In this document: positions 12,925-58,200 of the stretch, piece after piece | How the letters are laid out: each line of letters begins with the position of its first letter | How positions within the stretch are numbered: the stretch's first letter is position 1 | DNA from: Camelus dromedarius | Lineage: Eukaryota | Reading direction: 5' to 3' | Assembly (NCBI RefSeq): GCF_036321535.1 | Contig: NC_087446.1 | Coordinates: 61,194,001 to 61,258,000, forward strand | Length of the DNA stretch: 64,000 nucleotides | The notes under the pieces: model-generated | What the model saw: only the letters and a program-made list of their open reading frames with translations | The model's database searches: none | What the model was told of the DNA's origin: nothing | Program-made: the position numbers and the translations under genes

Positions 12925-14397
12925 ATTGGAATAGAGAGCTCAGAAATATCCATGTATTTATGGTCAGCTGATTTTCAACATAGGTNNNNNNNNNNNNNNN
13001 NNNNNNNNNNNNNNNNNNNNNNNNNNNNNNNNNNNNNNNNNNNNNNNNNNNNNNNNNNNNNNNNNNNNNNNNNNNNNNNNNNNNNNNNNNNNNNNNNNNN
13101 NNNNNNNNNNNNNNNNNNNNNNNNNNNNNNNACCTGAAACCTTAAAACTCTTAGAGAAAACATAGGAAAAAATCTTGACATTGATGTTAGCAATAATTTT
13201 TTGGGATATGACACCAAAAGCAAAGGCAACAAAACCAAAAATAGACACTTGCGATTGTATTGAACTAAAAAGCTTCTGCACAGAAAAGGAAAGAGTCAAC
13301 AGAATAAAAAGTTAACCTTCAGAATGGGAGAAAACATTTGCAAACCATGTATCTGATTAGGGGTTAATATCAGATTAACCCAATAGCAACCTAATAGCAA
13401 CAAAAAAAATCCCAATTAAAAAATGGACTAAGAACCCAAATAAACATTTCTCAAAAGAAGACATACAAATGGTCAAGGTTATATAAAAAGCTGCTCACTA
13501 TCATTAATCATCATGGAAAATACAAATCAAAATCACAATGATGTATCACCTCATATCCATTAGAATGGCGATTATCAAAAAAGCAGAAGTAACAGGTGTC
13601 GATAAGGATGTGGAAAAAAAAAAGAAATGTTTGTATTCTGTTGATAGGCACGTAAATTGATACAGCCTTTGTGAAAATAGTACGCAGATTCATCAAAAAA
13701 TTACAAATAGAACTGCCATCTGATCCACCAATTCCACTTTTATGTATACAGCCAAAGGAAATGAAATCTCAAAAAGATGTCTGTATTCCCGTATTTATTA
13801 CAGCATATTGACAAAAGCCAATACATGGAAACAACCTAAGTGTCCACTGACAGATGAACGGATAAAGAAAATGTGGTATACGTGCAACAGAACATTATTC
13901 AGCACTGAGAAAGAAGGAAACCCTGCCATTTGTGACAGCATGAATGAAACTGGAGGACATTATGCTACGTGAAATAAGGCAGGCACGGAAAGACAAAAAC
14001 TGCACGATCTCACCAATATGTGGACTCTAAAAAAATTAAACTTTCAGAAACAGAGACTAGAATGGTGGTTGTCAGGGCTTGGGTGATGGGAAAAATGGGG
14101 AGATGTTGGTAAAAGGGTACTTGGGTTCAGTTTTGAGGGATGAATAATTTCTGGAGATCTAATGTGCAGTATGGTAAGTTTTGGTAGTAATACCATACTG
14201 TATACTTGAAATTTGATAGGAATTATCTCAAATGTTCTCACCACAAAAAAAAAAAAAAATTAGCTATGGGAGTCAATGCGTATTTTAGTTTGCAGTAATC
14301 ATTTCATAATGTATATAAAAACGTCACATTGTACACCTTAAATATATATACAATTTTTGTTGTTGTTAAGCGTATCTCAAGGCTGAAGAAAATAAAG
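12925..14397 (+). mobile_element. 5'-truncated L1 (ORF2 3' end plus 3' UTR) spanning an assembly gap
   Basis: AATAGAGAGCTCAGAAATA...GGTCAGCTGATTTTC; AAAAGCTTCTGCACAG; CAACCTAAGTGTCCACTGACAGATGAACGGATAAAG; 3' UTR ending CACATTGTACACCTTAAATAT; ORF2 is broken by stops and frameshifts. Confidence 0.88.
12986..13131. other. Assembly gap (146 N)
   Basis: Run of N inside the L1. Confidence 1.
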
Positions 14398-25382: not shown

Positions 25383-25927
25383 CTCCATGGATTTTTTTTT
25401 AAGTTAAAAAAAAAAAAGTGATAATATTCTTTTTGAACTTGTTTTTTTGCTCCAGATACCCGGTGTGCTTGTTCTTAAGTGTGTGAAAGACTGTGTGTGT
25501 GAGCATGTTTGGGAACAATTCATTTCATTCCATTTCACACTTTAACATCAAATGAAAAATGAAATGTGGTGAGGGTATTCTTAAAGGATTAAACATACTC
25601 CTTCCAACTACTTAAACCAGGGGTTTGGGATTCAGATCTCTATAACCAAGACTGGAAGTCACTGGAAGACTTTAAAATTATTTTAACTACCACAACTAGA
25701 GTCATGTATGGAAATAAACCCATTGCATGAATTCTTTATATACATAATCTCAAAATTTAACCGCCCAAATAAGTTTTAAAAAGCAAACATTTAAAATTTG
25801 CCATTAAGGAAAATCTCATCTCCATCCTTAATTATGACTCTTCATTTCAACTAAAAGCTTCCAATACTTTGAAAATAAAATATGCCTATGAAAGTCATAA
25901 ACCCTGAAATCAGAGATGTAATTCTGG

Positions 25928-26265
25928 TTAAATATTAGTTTCTCTTTCTGAGGGATTAACCTCTGATCCCAGATCTTCGCCACTAGTATCATGATTTTTC
26001 GAAGTGTTCAAGGGTTCAGATTCTAAGGGATTAACCCCTGATCTCAGACTTCTGAAACTTGTGACATCATCATGACTTTTTGATGTGCTCAAGGGTTTCG
26101 ATTCTTGGAACTCAGGCTTATGTGCGTCCTCCAACCTCTTTTCCTTGGCGAGCAGTCTGTAGTTGATAGCATTGCCAATGAGCAGCCACACACTGGATGT
26201 GAACACAATAGCTCCACAGACCATATACATATATTTATATTGGCCGGTTTCATCCACCAATTTAC
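25928..26265 (-). CDS. SLC16A7: MCT2 last coding exon: TM12 plus extended cytoplasmic C-terminal tail, stop TAA
   Basis: Acceptor gttctttgtcttttAG|GT AAA TTG GTG GAT; encodes KLVDETGQYKYMYMVCGAIVFTSSVWLLIGNAINYRLLAKE...SERETNI*; ERETNI is the recalled C-terminus of human MCT2; 338 nt. Confidence 0.97.
25949..26104 (-). repeat. Diverged in-frame tandem duplication inside the MCT2 C-terminal tail (81 nt + 75 nt)
   Basis: Copy 1 (26024-26104) ESKPLSTSKSHDDVTSFRSLRSGVNPL; copy 2 (25949-26023) ESEPLNTSKNHDTSGEDLGSEVNPS; 59/75 aligned nt identical plus one 6-nt indel. Confidence 0.92.
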
Positions 26266-26754
26266 CTAAAAGACAAAGAACATCTTTTAAGATAGCACAA
26301 TAAAACAGCCACAAAATGATAACATTTGCAAATAAATTCTTCCCTACACCGGGTACCTATTTCTTATTTAAGGTAATATGATGAGAGTTTAATAAAGAAA
26401 AAAATAGTCCAGATTATGATTTCCTATATGCGTAGTAAAGGCATCTATAGTATATTAAATTATATATGTTAAATTAAATATGTTAAATGTATTGAAAATT
26501 ATTTCCCTCAATAGAAGTGTACAACCAAATCAAGCTAGGTATATATGTGTCTGTGTATGTATTCATACATGTGTGAAATACATTTTTAAACCTACATATG
26601 TAGGAATATATAAACACATTTACAAATGGAAACATATATATGAATATATTTATAGCATACATATTGAGATTGCTTCATCCTTGCTACATTTGGTGTCTTT
26701 TCAATAAAGAGGAAAAACTACATTCTTTAGGAAAAATTCAACGGCTTTTATACG

Positions 26755-28596: not shown

Positions 28597-29398
28597 GGTC
28601 TAAGTAAATACTTCACATTTAGTGTCAACCAAAGCAATACTATACCGTGGTTACTGGAAAAGACTGGCCAACCAAAAGCATTTAATATTTATAACACTGA
28701 ATTCTAAGACTGAACAAAGCCTTAACTTCAAAAATGAACTTACACATGTGTCTTTCTCAGTCTCCTTACTGGATAAGTTAGCACAGATACTTTTACAGGC
28801 TTCACTGACAGTATTTTAGACCTTAAAATCTAACGGTAATCTTTACAATTTATAAATGTGGAATATAAGTATCTGATCAAGAACATGACTTTGAATGAAT
28901 TTCCCTTCATTCTTGCATTCTTATTCATATGTCCTATCAGTGGGATTATGAACGTGTTCCTTCATTAAGCATGTAACTAGTTCCGTATTAATATAACCAA
29001 TATACTCCAGTAAGAACCTGTTGGGAGCATTACTTCAAATATTTGACTCATTTTAATAAAAAAGAAAAGGAATATGTTTAAAAATGATAAAGTGGCATCT
29101 TATTTCTATGATACATTTTTAAAAGCACATAACAAACTCATATGGGGGAAACCCTGAAAACTATGCTAATTATCAGTCTAACTTAAATTCTTATATTCAT
29201 AAGTCCAAGCTCAGAATCAAATTTTTGTCTAAAATATGCTAATTATGAAATTGAATTAAAGCCTCAAAGTAACACACCCACAGTCTTTTAGGCGATTAGG
29301 TGTCATTATTACAAACACATTTTACACTACAAAGAAAGTTTCGGCTAATGAATATTAATTTTATGCATTTTGCTTTCTTTGATGAGAAGTATTCTTAC

Positions 29399-30217
29399 CA
29401 GCAAGAGGAGGGCCAAGAAGAACTGGGCAACACTCCACAATTGTGACGAGCCCCACAGCGCTGGAAAACCTCTGAGCACCGACCAGGTCCATGAGCGTCT
29501 CAAAGAGGACACTGCTAACACTCCCAAATCCGAGGCCAAAAAACACAGCGTAGACCACCAGGCTAGGGTAGTCGTCAGCCAGTGGGCACAAGAGATGACA
29601 CACGCCGTTGAACATCACTGCAAAACTGAAGAAGTACTGGATTCGGGGTCGGATGAATCTGGAGTTGGCAATGAATCCTACAGAAGGTCTGGCAAACATA
29701 TCAACAAAAGCCATAACAGACAGCAAGAAGGCAGCGGAATACTCGTCAATTCCTTTGTCTTTGGCGTACGGAGCCAAGAATATAATGGGGGCAAAGAACC
29801 CCAGGAACATGATGACATTTCCAGATAAGTATATGAGAAACCCCCTGTGCTTAAAAAGGGAGAAATCTAAATACTTATTAATTGTTTCCCATGTTGATTT
29901 CTTCTTATGTCTCGTCTTCTCACCCAAATCCGTCGCTCTTATGCCAACCTTGTTTTTAGACTTCTTTGTAGTTAGTTTGGGTCCCACAGGTCTCATGAGA
30001 GACCCAGCCACACAGGCATTCAACAGTATACCTCCCAAAATCAAGAAGCTTCCTTTCCAGCCGTAAGTATTAAAGAGGAACTGGTTGAAGGGAGCCAGCG
30101 TGCTTAAGAAAACAGGACTTCCTGCCATGGCCAGGCCATTCGCCGTCGGCCGTTTCTTGTAGAAGTATTTGCCGATGATTGTTAAGGCAGGTTGCAGGTT
30201 GAAGGCCAGACCTAAAC
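29399..30217 (-). CDS. SLC16A7: MCT2 large internal coding exon (819 nt)
   Basis: Acceptor ttttatcctgtgtAG|GTTTAGGTCTGGCC and donor GCTG|GTAAGA; encodes [37 protein letters not shown]...[11 protein letters not shown]...[13 protein letters not shown], the MCT signature with the TM8 Asp/Arg pair; the loop [22 protein letters not shown] is MCT2-type. Confidence 0.98.
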
Positions 30218-32382: not shown

Positions 32383-33418
32383 TAAATAGTATTTCTGCAC
32401 AAAGGAAAGGGCATTCACTCCACCGTGACAGTTCTTAGAGACATGAAGATTCTCATTTGCCATGTCAGAGGTGTTTTACCATATCAAAGAAAAAAAAAAG
32501 CAGTTGTCCATAGGTTGTAAAGAGAAAGATTTTAACATCACTATTACTGTATCTAATTTTTTTTTATCAAATGATGCATAAGTGCAAGATTAGACTGATG
32601 TAAAATCATAAAAAGAGAAATAATTTATCTTTTTATCTGTAGGTAAAAGGAAAAGATTCCATTTCTTTAACTTAAAACTTTTTTTTTCTTAAAACTTTGA
32701 GTATAGATTTGTTTAATACAATTTACCATTGAGGCTACCAAAAACAGTGTTTTCCAAATGCACATATTCAGGTCAGCTGGAGTCTACAGATGTGCATGAG
32801 AAACTATAATCAAGTGATAGGGTGTCATTTAAAAATATTTGTGTTTAGTGGCAAATGTGCCCTCCAGAGTTTTTAAATAGAATCTTTTAGTAAGGAGAAG
32901 GGACATTGGTGCAGAGCTCAGCCACTAATCACAACACAGGCACCAATAATTCTAGTGTTAAAGCTAAACCAGTGACTTCAGGAAATATCTTTTTTGGGAC
33001 CATTTTTAACCTATTATGAGCAATCAGCCAGATACTAATAGTAATAAGCAATGAAAATAATTTTTTTTTATGAAGCTATTTACATGCCAGAAAGTCTGTT
33101 TCCACAATACCGTCTTAACTAGCTGAAGATTTAATGTTGAAACAGTAAAAACCAACCAAAGAGGTTTTCTTTTTGACATTGTATCACAGCCCATAACATG
33201 TCTGGTAACTTGCTTTTTCCATTTTCGAAATTAGTGTGATCGCCCATCCTGTAGCCAGTATTTCAGTATACTCTGACAATACTTTAAGATACCATCTGAT
33301 GTAAAAAGGAAATTCAAAGAAAGCAATTAGAATGCTCTGCTGCTCATGCTTCTGACAGAATTTGGCAAACAACAGAAGTGTTAAGAAGAACATGAGCTGA
33401 ACGCAAAGCCGGACTTAC

Positions 33419-33562
33419 CGCAAATGAATCCCATGGTGATGTAAAGTTGTACCACGTTGGTACTGAAAGAGGCCGAGACCATTCCCAGACAGCACAGCAA
33501 GCCTCCTGCCATCACCACGGGCCGGCTGCCGTAGTTATTCACCAGGACACTGCTTATAGGAC
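33419..33562 (-). CDS. SLC16A7: MCT2 internal coding exon (144 nt), first SLC16A7 coding exon within the window
   Basis: Minus strand reads tttcctctctgcctcAG|GT CCT ATA AGC AGT...GGA TTC ATT TGC G|GTAAGT; translation (G)PISSVLVNNYGSRPVVMAGGLLCCLGMVSASFSTNVVQLYITMGFIC(G) matches recalled MCT2/MCT1 TM3-TM4; 144 nt, phase 1-1. Confidence 0.97.
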
Positions 33563-34029
33563 CTGAGGCAGAGAGGAAATGAAGAAACCTTCAGTTGCTG
33601 GGTTATTTATTTATAACCACTTGCTAATTCTGAAAGCTGGGAAGCACTTTTTAACGATCAAAGAAAAATACTTGAGTTCATATGGGATTTCATGAAGACT
33701 TTTCAGCCCTTTGCAATCTGACTGGTTGTCTTTAACAATATACATACAAGCACAGGAAGTAAGAAATGAGACTTGTTTGACATACACTCTGTTAGGACCG
33801 TCATTATTCCACTTTGGATGGAAAAGCTTTTCAGCAGGACATACCTCAACTCCCTAAATATCTTTAAACACAGGTAAATTTGTGTAACAAAAATCTAGGG
33901 ATTATATAAAAGACTTGTCTGTTAGAATTTTATTTCTTGGAATAATATGTATGGATGCACACATATATGCCTTTAACTGGAGCTGAATTTTTTGTTTTAT
34001 TTATACCTCACTGTGACTTTTCTTCAATA

Positions 34030-56949: not shown

Positions 56950-58200
56950 CTGCTTCCCCTGATGCCCTTTCAGCTAGAAGCCGCTTTCTCTCTCAACCAA
57001 GCACTCAGGCCCGCGAGGCGCACACACGTCCTCCCTGGTTCCTATCAGCCTCGAAACTCGACCCACCTTTGCCCTTCCTTGGATAAACCTTCTGCTTCTC
57101 TGAAGCTGTTTCCATCGAGTTATAGCAGCCTCTCCAGCCTTCTCTTTGCTCTTGTCTTTTGGCACATGGATCTTACCCACCGTCACGGCTGGCTCGTGGC
57201 TGAGTCGGTCTCTGCTTCACTGCCAGCCATTTCTCTTGAGGACATCAGTATACACACGGCTTTGCAGTTCCTTGACCTTTTTTATTTCCTCTGATCTTTT
57301 GGCTTTTCTTNNNNNNNNNNNNNNNNNNNNNNNNNNNNNNNNNNNNNNNNNNNNNNNNNNNNNNNNNNNNNNNNNNNNNNNNNNNNNNNNNNNNNNNNNN
57401 NNNNNNNNNNNNNNNNNNNNNNNNNNNNNNNNNNNNNNNNNNNNNCAATGATGCACTTAATGGTGATGAACTGAAACTTGTCATCAACCAATACAGCGCT
57501 TCCTTCCCCCTCAATTCAAATGTAAACATCCCGCTCACCAACTCACTCTCACTCCTGCTATTAACAATTTCTCAGTCTTATCAACGTCTCCAATCCATAG
57601 ACGCTACTTTTCCCCCTCTATCCTCCAACATTTTGCAAGCTCTCTACATTTCTTTCCCTTGCAGAACTTAAATTGGATGGCTGCTGCTTATAACAGCTCC
57701 TTCGACAGCACCCTTGCGTCATTTACTCCTTTGCCCGTAATGTCATCTGGAAAATACCTGAGGATGAGCTCGTGCGTATCCCCCTTCCCACACCTACACT
57801 GAAGATCTGAGAACTGCTGCAGAAAAGGCGTAAACCTGTCTTGACTGGTGCCTTTCAGTTTCACGATCACAAGCTTCAGATGGCGTCTCAGCAGTGTCCC
57901 AATACTGCCGTAGTATTTTTCTAGCAATCCCGCTTTGCCACTGTTTCAGAATTCACACACCACACCCTCTGCCCTCGGAACACCTGTCCTCCCTCCTCTG
58001 GTACCAACCTCCCCACAGTCAGCCTATGGAGACCAGAGAAGTTGCACCAGAGAGTAACTCACCTTTTCATGTCTAAAGACCCCACTCGACTTAAACACGC
58101 TCTCCTATTCCTTCTCAATGCAACATTTATACCCACCTCTCATTTTCAATGATCTTTCTAACAAAAGCATAACACTCAGTATCGGCTAAAGTTCCTTCAC
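56950..58200 (+). mobile_element. L2 ORF2 remnant (endonuclease region), split by an assembly gap
   Basis: Translation PAISLEDISIH...ALQFLDL resembles the L2 endonuclease motif IILGDFNIH...SQFLDL; C/T-rich L2-like composition continues after the gap. Confidence 0.6.
57311..57445. other. Assembly gap (135 N)
   Basis: Run of N. Confidence 1.

What the first reader, a model, noticed from the sequence alone, without database searches (positions are those of the whole stretch)
25949..26104. MCT2 C-terminal tail lengthened by an old in-frame internal tandem duplication
Seen: the last coding exon holds two consecutive related units, ESKPLSTSKSHDDVTSFRSLRSGVNPL (81 nt) and ESEPLNTSKNHDTSGEDLGSEVNPS (75 nt). 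They share 59/75 aligned nt and 16/25 aa, with one 6-nt indel; the frame is kept and there is no stop. Recalled knowledge: human MCT2 is 478 aa with one ESEPL...S unit before ERETNI and about 257 coding nt in this exon, versus 338 here. Inference: this orthologue is about 505 aa with a tail about 27 aa longer. Divergence of about 21% means an old event rather than an assembly duplication, possibly camelid- or artiodactyl-specific. About 12 nonsynonymous versus 4 synonymous differences looks near-neutral, so only frame and length are evidently conserved.
Basis: partly seen in the sequence, partly recalled or inferred. Interest (0 to 1): 0.72.

Follow-up and report, generated by a model that had tools for sequence, protein, structure and literature searches.

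The report
Camelid MCT2 tail doubled by duplication
The camel gene for the lactate/pyruvate transporter MCT2 carries an old, in-frame doubling of a roughly 25-residue piece of its floppy cytoplasmic tail; it is found only in camels and alpaca, it is present in spliced mRNA, and it looks like a nearly neutral lineage-specific quirk rather than a new mechanism.

Summary
On the minus strand, the last coding exon of SLC16A7/MCT2 (26265..25928) holds two head-to-tail units. U1 is 26104..26024 (81 nt) and U2 is 26023..25949 (75 nt). They share 59/75 nt and 16/25 aa, with 12 nonsynonymous and 4 synonymous differences (dN/dS 0.84). The alignment score is about 23 SD above shuffles.

- **Distribution.** Dromedary, wild and domestic Bactrian camel (505 aa) and alpaca (506 aa) have both units. 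The more than 100 other mammalian MCT2 proteins examined have one unit. These include pig, peccary, hippo, whales, ruminants, horse, rhino, carnivores, bats, primates, rodents, afrotheres and xenarthrans.
- **Age.** Unit trees group U1 with U1 and U2 with U2 across camelids. The duplication therefore predates the camel/llama split and has not been homogenised since. Intron-calibrated divergence puts it early on the camelid stem.
- **Expression.** Three spliced cDNA contigs from public runs encode the whole 505-aa protein with both units.
- **Tail properties.** The tail is predicted to be disordered. The camelid tail is the longest (73-74 aa) and the most acidic (net charge -5) in the sample.

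No function is shown. A near-neutral expansion is the most likely reading. Interest is low to moderate.

The parts
25928..26265 (-). Last coding exon of SLC16A7 (MCT2), coding part including the TAA stop (25930-25928). The AG acceptor is at 26267-26266.
   Evidence: Spliced cDNA contigs L005-L007 join 29399 to 26265.
26024..26104 (-). Unit 1 (proximal copy), 81 nt / 27 aa, ESKPL...GVNPL. Its middle is the more ancestral-like. It carries E->K in the otherwise invariant third position of the ESEPL motif.
25949..26023 (-). Unit 2 (distal copy), 75 nt / 25 aa, ESEPL...EVNPS. It keeps the canonical ESEPL start and the NPS end next to ERETNI. Its middle is acidic and diverged.
25931..25948 (-). Codons for the terminal ERETNI. 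With the preceding Ser this forms the near-invariant SERETNI end of mammalian MCT2, which the duplication left intact.
25392..25927 (-). 3' UTR, at least this far. It is covered contiguously by cDNA contigs.
   Evidence: L006 reaches 25392, L005 reaches 25406.
29399..30217 (-). Preceding large coding exon (TM5-TM11 region and the TM6/7 loop). The GT donor is at 29398-29397.
33420..33564 (-). Next coding exon upstream, about 145 nt. Boundaries are taken from BLAST HSPs and are good to +/-3 nt.

Best explanation
This is a real, fixed and expressed in-frame tandem duplication of about 75-84 nt in the last exon of SLC16A7. It arose once on the camelid (Tylopoda) stem lineage, after the split from other artiodactyls and before the Camelus/Vicugna split.

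[quoted passage not shown] That segment lies between the juxtamembrane stretch after TM12 and the conserved SERETNI end. The camelid tail is 73-74 aa, against 38-61 aa in other mammals.

**Likely mechanism.** The duplicated block begins with GAA and is followed by GAA. This 3-nt microhomology fits replication slippage or microhomology-mediated tandem duplication (inference).

**What happened afterwards.** The tail is intrinsically disordered. The two copies have diverged at about the neutral rate (dN/dS 0.84). The distal copy kept the conserved end motifs. The proximal copy kept the ancestral-like middle but lost the invariant Glu of ESEPL, and it is where the camel/alpaca differences fall.

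**Most likely consequence.** The extra copy probably acts as a tolerated spacer in a flexible tail. Rat experiments show that this tail modulates ancillary-protein (basigin/embigin) dependent surface expression but not substrate affinity.

**Status of each step.**
- Shown: existence, phylogenetic distribution, age bracket, presence in spliced mRNA, near-neutral divergence.
- Inferred: the mutational mechanism, disorder (from an AF2 model and composition), and the absence of a major functional effect.
For: - **Sequence and statistics:**
- **Distribution.** P0001 (C. dromedarius), P0121 and P0126 (C. ferus, C. bactrianus) are 505 aa and P0002 (Vicugna pacos) is 506 aa, all with two units. Of 120 MCT2 sequences with a complete tail, only the 7 camelid entries have two units.
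- **Genomic DNA.** The last exons of alpaca, C. ferus, pig, hippo, deer, sperm whale and donkey were read directly. Only the camelids have two units.
- **Unit tree.** The U1 clade has 99% bootstrap support and the U2 clade 100%, and each contains all three camelids. Both copies share a derived Thr codon (AAA->ACN) and a shorter KS-repeat region relative to pig, hippo and whale.
- **Neutral yardstick.** The intron ML tree gives a Tylopoda stem of 0.099 and a camel tip of 0.012 substitutions per site. The U1-U2 JC distance is 0.18-0.25 and dS is 0.29.
- **Expression.** Three Logan contigs from three runs are spliced (33564..33417 | 30217..29399 | 26265..about 25400). They translate exactly to the 505-aa protein. 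Four runs recorded as RNA-seq hold 96% of the exon/UTR words.
- **Disorder.** The AF2 model of the tail, built with a 27-sequence alignment, has no secondary structure, pTM 0.14 and mean pLDDT 64. 81% of tail residues are polar or disorder-promoting.
- **Tail function.** In rat MCT2, removing or swapping the tail leaves the lactate Km unchanged but affects basigin-dependent surface expression (PMC2947196).
Against: - Neutrality rests on only 25 aligned codons (4 synonymous differences), so dN/dS 0.84 has a very wide error and cannot exclude episodic selection.
- U2 is identical at the protein level in camel and alpaca, and the frame has been kept for tens of millions of years. This could mean constraint. 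However, with 2.9% neutral divergence only about 2 substitutions are expected in 75 nt, so it is not significant.
- The camelid tail is an outlier in net charge (-5, against +5 to +8 in pig and whales). This hints that more than a passive insertion has occurred.
- No functional data exist for any camelid MCT2.
Confidence: 0.8

Rival explanations
1. Adaptive remodelling. The doubled tail, together with the loss of the Lys-rich juxtamembrane stretch and a swing to net negative charge, was selected in camelids. Under this reading it changes how the MCT2 tail engages the cytoplasmic tails of embigin or basigin, a scaffold, or a proton-collecting partner. That would alter surface expression or localisation in tissues such as testis, kidney, liver or neurons.
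For: - The camelid tail is the longest and the most acidic of 120 sequences.
- U1 and U2 stem branches (0.150 and 0.153) are each about 1.5 times the neutral Tylopoda stem of 0.099.
- U2 is invariant in protein between camel and alpaca.
- The rat MCT2 tail takes part in ancillary-protein interaction (PMC2947196).
Against: - dN/dS between the copies is 0.84 and gives no signal above 1.
- The branch excess amounts to about 11 substitutions against about 7 expected on 75 sites, which is not significant.
- The tail varies widely in length and charge across mammals (net charge -5 to +9). Pigs also have an independent expansion, so lability is the norm.
- There is no run of three acidic residues like the CAII-binding clusters of MCT1 and MCT4.
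Confidence: 0.15
2. Ancestral two-unit tail. Under this reading the doubled tail is old in mammals or artiodactyls and was lost elsewhere, so camelids merely retain it.
For: U1-U2 divergence (about 21%) is as large as either copy's distance to the pig or whale unit. On distance alone, the duplication is not clearly younger than the artiodactyl root.
Against: - All successive outgroups have one unit: Suina, Ruminantia, Whippomorpha, Perissodactyla, Carnivora, Pholidota, Chiroptera, Eulipotyphla, primates, Glires, Afrotheria and Xenarthra. Retention would require several independent precise losses.
- U1 and U2 share derived states relative to the other artiodactyls.
- U1 and U2 group together in the unit tree, though only at 58% support.
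Confidence: 0.02
3. Artefact. Under this reading the second copy is an assembly or annotation error, or one copy is removed from the mature mRNA.
For: None was found. TRF did not call the repeat, but only because the copies are diverged.
Against: - Four species have independent assemblies with the same structure.
- The copies differ at 21% of sites, which is incompatible with a collapsed or expanded assembly repeat.
- Three spliced cDNA contigs carry both copies.
Confidence: 0.01

Closest known systems
Mammalian MCT2 (SLC16A7) orthologues with a single-unit tail, e.g. pig (494 aa), whales (483-488 aa), ruminants (481-482 aa) and catarrhine primates (478 aa)
   Same: The gene and exon structure are the same. 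The transmembrane core is 84-92% identical. All share the ESEPL motif at the start of the unit and the near-invariant SERETNI C-terminus.
   Different: Camelids have two units in tandem, giving a 73-74 aa tail against 38-61 aa. They also have a Lys-rich juxtamembrane stretch that is 4-5 residues shorter, and a net tail charge of -5 against a median of +1.
Suina-specific expansion of the 9-nt (Lys-Ser-x) repeat in the same tail (pig, warthog, peccary)
   Same: It is an independent in-frame length increase in the same disordered tail segment in another artiodactyl lineage.
   Different: It comprises only two extra 9-nt repeats (18 nt, 6 aa) inside the unit. It is a micro-repeat expansion and not a duplication of the whole unit.
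Rat MCT1/MCT2 tail-swap and truncation constructs (Ovens et al. 2010, PMC2947196)
   Same: They concern the same region, everything after the YRL just past TM12. They show what the tail does: it supports ancillary-protein-dependent surface expression and has no effect on lactate Km.
   Different: They are laboratory constructs of the rat proteins. No natural or engineered tail duplication was tested, and no camelid protein.

Membership tests
SLC16A7 / MCT2 orthologue | Sequence orthology to annotated MCT2 across the core | tested here: met
   the large exon is 100% identical to C. dromedarius MCT2 and 84-92% identical to MCT2 of other mammals, with E values down to 1e-176. The hits carry the precomputed Pfam domain PF07690 (MFS_1).
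SLC16A7 / MCT2 orthologue | Conserved C-terminal end motif (S)ERETNI and the ESEPL motif in the tail | tested here: met
   ERET-I is invariant in 27 aligned tails. ESEPL is the commonest form and U2 keeps it, whereas U1 has ESKPL.
SLC16A7 / MCT2 orthologue | Exons joined in mRNA to give one full-length open reading frame | tested here: met
   the spliced contigs L005-L007 translate exactly to the 505-aa protein.
SLC16A7 / MCT2 orthologue | High-affinity proton-coupled lactate/pyruvate transport with embigin as partner | not testable with these tools
   Requires expression and transport assays.
Lineage-specific in-frame tandem duplication | Two head-to-tail copies without a spacer, frame kept, similarity beyond chance | tested here: met
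Lineage-specific in-frame tandem duplication | Single copy in outgroups; both copies orthologous across the ingroup | tested here: met
   for single copies in outgroups. One search gives a U1 clade at 99% and a U2 clade at 100% bootstrap support.
CAII-binding acidic cluster of MCT1/MCT4 tails | A run of three acidic residues in the C-terminal tail (recalled from the literature on MCT1 and MCT4) | tested here: not met
   The camel tail has only ED or DD pairs and no run of three. CAII does not enhance MCT2 (PMC3794380).

The most novel reading that the evidence does not exclude
The camelid MCT2 tail has been functionally remodelled. The duplication, together with a swing of 10-13 charge units from a basic to an acidic tail, would create a new or altered docking surface for the embigin or basigin tails, a scaffold, or a proton-handling partner. 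This would retune surface delivery or local activity of the high-affinity lactate/pyruvate/ketone-body transporter, as part of the unusual energy metabolism of camelids.
Probability: 0.12. Interest if true: 0.5.

Novelty: new variant of a known kind. Interest (0 to 1): 0.27.

Why it matters
MCT2 is the high-affinity lactate/pyruvate/ketone-body transporter of neurons, kidney, liver and sperm. Its tail is the part that tunes pairing with ancillary proteins and surface expression.

A clade-wide natural tail doubling with charge reversal offers a ready-made variant. It can be used to ask how much length and charge that tail tolerates.

It is also a clean, datable synapomorphy of Camelidae. The 505/506-aa proteins are already in RefSeq. 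I found no paper that describes the duplication.

If the extra unit is neutral, as I think most likely, this is only a tidy example of in-frame repeat turnover in a disordered region.

Tried and rejected
- **Tandem Repeats Finder** on 25700-26400 found nothing even at minimum score 30. The copies are too diverged and only two in number. The repeat was established by pairwise alignment and shuffles instead.
No read depth, joint counts or minor-isoform estimate could therefore be obtained. Later alignment and folding used only the tail (residues 433-505 and homologous parts).
- **Human protein length.** For the same reason I did not look up the cluster of the 478-aa primate representative to confirm the human entry by name. 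Human MCT2 = 478 aa rests on established knowledge plus the 478-aa catarrhine representative.
- **Camel versus alpaca constraint test.** There are 2 substitutions and one 3-nt indel in 156 nt, against about 4.5 expected at 2.9% neutral divergence. This is not significant either way.
- **A possible compensated -1/+1 frameshift** in the middle of one copy. It is suggested by the better out-of-frame nucleotide alignment (62/74) than the in-frame one (59/75). I considered it but it cannot be distinguished from chance on 9 nt.
- **Literature searches.** SLC16A7 + camel, MCT2 + camelid terms, and MCT2 + PDZ gave nothing on this duplication, and nothing on a PDZ partner for the T-N-I end.
- **The search of earlier findings** returned only this same finding.

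Full report
**1. Observation**

The feature lies on the minus strand. After an AG acceptor at 26267-26266, an open frame runs from 26265 to a TAA stop at 25930-25928 (338 nt). It encodes (G)KLVDETGQYKYMY..., then TM12, then a long polar tail ending in ERETNI.

Within it, 26104..26024 (81 nt, 27 aa, ESKPL...GVNPL) is followed directly by 25949-26023 read on the minus strand (75 nt, 25 aa, ESEPL...EVNPS).

| Measure | Value |
|---|---|
| In-frame nucleotide identity | 59/75 |
| Amino-acid identity | 16/25 |
| Indel | one 6-nt gap |
| Synonymous / nonsynonymous differences | 4 / 12 |
| Nei-Gojobori dS, dN, dN/dS | 0.29, 0.24, 0.84 |
| Local alignment score | 69 |
| Score of 2000 shuffles | 13.5 +/- 2.4, maximum 24 |

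Tandem Repeats Finder is silent, which merely reflects two diverged copies.

**2. What the gene is**

The preceding large exon (30217..29399, GT donor at 29398) was used as a protein query. It hit Camelus dromedarius monocarboxylate transporter 2 (P0001, 505 aa) at 100% identity and Vicugna pacos MCT2 (P0002, 506 aa). MCT2 of about 100 other mammals followed at 84-92% identity.

The cluster of P0001 also holds the 505-aa proteins of C. ferus and C. bactrianus.

From KLVD onward the exon encodes 111 aa in camel. In the 478-aa catarrhine representative it encodes 84 aa.

**3. Distribution**

I read the C-termini of 26 representative species. I then read all 120 retrieved sequences that have a complete NYRLL...ERETNI tail.

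- Only the seven camelid entries contain two ES(E/K)PL units.
- Every other sequence has one unit, or a degenerate one.
- Tail length after NYRLL is 73-74 aa in camelids and 38-61 aa elsewhere, with a mode of 50-51.

I also fetched genomic DNA for alpaca, C. ferus, pig, hippo, white-tailed deer, sperm whale and donkey, and read the last exon directly. Both camelids have U1 and U2 with the same boundaries. The five outgroups have a single unit. An alignment of 27 tails shows the camelid block as a clean insertion in front of (P)SERETNI.

Tylopoda is the first-branching living artiodactyl lineage, and all other orders have one unit. A gain on the camelid stem is therefore by far the most parsimonious history.

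Two features of both copies, relative to pig, hippo and whale, place the duplication after the camelid lineage had begun to diverge. Both share a Thr codon where the others have AAA (Lys), and both have a shorter Lys-Ser repeat region.

**4. Age**

A maximum-likelihood tree of the units recovers a U1 clade (99% bootstrap) and a U2 clade (100%). Each contains dromedary, wild Bactrian camel and alpaca. The duplication thus predates the Camelini/Lamini split, and the copies have not been homogenised by conversion since. U1 and U2 are sisters with only weak support (58%).

As a neutral yardstick I aligned the intron between the last two exons across eight species. There were 2741 columns complete in all species.

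| Branch or distance | Substitutions per site |
|---|---|
| Tylopoda stem | 0.099 |
| Camel tip | 0.012 |
| Alpaca tip | 0.017 |
| Camel to alpaca | 0.029 |

Two copies born at the very base of the stem would differ by about 0.22 if they evolved neutrally. The observed U1-U2 JC distance is 0.18 (best nucleotide alignment) to 0.25 (in-frame alignment), with dS 0.29.

Under neutrality, even the lower 95% bound of the in-frame distance (about 0.14) places the event in roughly the oldest 40% of the stem. The alternative is a later event followed by somewhat accelerated divergence.

With only 75 sites these two cannot be separated. Each copy's stem of about 0.15 corresponds to about 11 substitutions where about 7 are expected, which is not significant. 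'Old' is firmly supported. An absolute date would depend on outside calibrations.

**5. Expression**

An exact look-up of the 505-aa Camelus protein returned three short contigs (2.0-2.2 kb). They were assembled from three different public runs, and each holds the entire 1518-nt ORF uninterrupted.

Mapped on the window, the contigs are spliced: 33564..33417, then 30217..29399, then 26265 onward through both units, the stop and at least 530 nt of 3' UTR. Identity is 99.4-100%. Their first roughly 400 nt lie upstream of the window.

Such contigs can only come from cDNA. The run search adds that four runs recorded as RNA-seq hold 96% of the sampled words of 25700-26265. The acceptor at 26265 is therefore used, and mRNA with both copies exists.

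I could not quantify minor isoforms. I worked beside those places afterwards.

**6. Nature of the region and likely mechanism**

*Disorder.* In the camel tail, 81% of residues are polar or disorder-promoting and 16% are hydrophobic. An AlphaFold2 model built with a 27-sequence alignment has no secondary structure, pTM 0.14 and mean pLDDT 64. This fits an intrinsically disordered cytoplasmic tail.

*Conserved elements.* Across mammals the tail has only two well conserved elements. One is ESEPL at the start of the unit, where the third-position Glu is replaced only in camelid U1. The other is the terminal SERETNI. T-x-I at the C-terminus matches the class I PDZ-ligand consensus. That is an inference from the general consensus, and I found no paper showing a PDZ partner.

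*How the duplication arose.* The duplication left both conserved elements intact in their normal relative arrangement in the distal copy. U1 behaves as an insert between the juxtamembrane stretch and that arrangement. The duplicated block starts with GAA and is followed by GAA, so the junction is ambiguous by 3 nt. This microhomology is typical of slippage-type tandem duplications (inference).

*Divergence since.* Camel and alpaca proteins differ at only four positions in 505. Two of these (one Val indel and Leu/Pro) lie in U1, while U2 is identical. This points to U1 as the least constrained segment, although the numbers are small.

**7. Function**

In rat MCT2, deleting or swapping everything after the YRL just past TM12 leaves the lactate Km unchanged. 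Deleting the tail, however, abolishes surface expression with endogenous basigin unless embigin is supplied. This led to the proposal of a secondary tail-to-tail interaction with the ancillary protein (PMC2947196).

MCT2 is not enhanced by intracellular CAII (PMC3794380). The camel tail has no run of three acidic residues of the kind I recall as the CAII site of MCT1 and MCT4.

The best-supported reading is therefore a tolerated spacer expansion in a flexible regulatory tail.

One observation keeps an adaptive reading alive. The camelid tail is the most acidic of the 120 sequences, with net charge -5. Its nearest artiodactyl relatives are at +5 to +8 and the median is +1. Three things contribute:
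- the acidic middle of U2;
- the replacement of Lys-Ser repeats;
- a juxtamembrane Lys-rich stretch that is 4-5 residues shorter.

Tail length and charge nevertheless vary widely across mammals, and pigs have their own expansion. Lability is evidently normal here.

**8. Novelty and verdict**

The 505/506-aa proteins are already in public annotation. Full-text searches found no description of the duplication and no study of camelid MCT2. The event belongs to a very common class, in-frame repeat turnover in a disordered region of a well-known transporter.

I rate it a new variant of a known kind. It is real, cleanly camelid-specific, old and expressed, but it has no demonstrated functional consequence. 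Interest is about 0.27.

My estimates are:

| Claim | Estimate |
|---|---|
| The duplication is real and camelid-specific | about 0.97 |
| It is present in the main mRNA | about 0.9 |
| It is functionally near-neutral | about 0.6-0.7 |

Noticed in passing
L002 (pig) last exon, gene end 55923; proteins P0130, P0005, P0132: Suina (pig, warthog, peccary; 494 aa) carry an independent in-frame expansion in the same tail. There are two extra copies of a 9-nt AAAAGTNNN (Lys-Ser-x) repeat, giving KSFKSLKSMKSHKSK. Hippo and whales have the shorter KSxKSQKSK. The same 9-nt periodicity is still visible in camel U1 (TSF RSL RSG).
   Followed up: partly
window 26149..26105 (minus strand), tail residues 433-447: Camelids lack 4-5 residues of the Lys-rich juxtamembrane stretch found in other mammals (KEKRLEDA----HKPEFQ against KEKKLEEAKKKxHxPES). 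Together with the acidic U2, this makes the camelid tail the most acidic of the 120 sequences, with net charge -5.
   Followed up: partly
window 26066-26071 region of U1 versus L001 (alpaca): Dromedary and C. ferus U1 is 3 nt shorter than alpaca U1 (HD-DV against HDVDV). This is a further small in-frame indel that arose after the Camelini/Lamini split.
   Followed up: yes
protein P0124 / P0127 (C. bactrianus isoform X1, 559 aa): An annotated 559-aa isoform, 54 aa longer than the 505-aa form, sits in the same 90% cluster and carries the same two-unit tail. The extra residues therefore lie outside the tail. I did not examine them or check them against transcripts.
   Followed up: no
window 12986-13131 and 57311-57445: Two runs of N (146 and 135 nt), which are assembly gaps or masked stretches.
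   Followed up: no
window 25382 (minus strand): An AATAAA hexamer lies just downstream of where two cDNA contigs end (25392 and 25406). The contig ends sit in A/T homopolymer runs, so they are probably assembly breaks and not a poly(A) site.
   Followed up: no
L010 (sperm whale) intron before the last exon: This intron is 5977 nt including 501 N, against about 3.1-4.1 kb in the other species. It probably holds a lineage-specific insertion and a gap.
   Followed up: no
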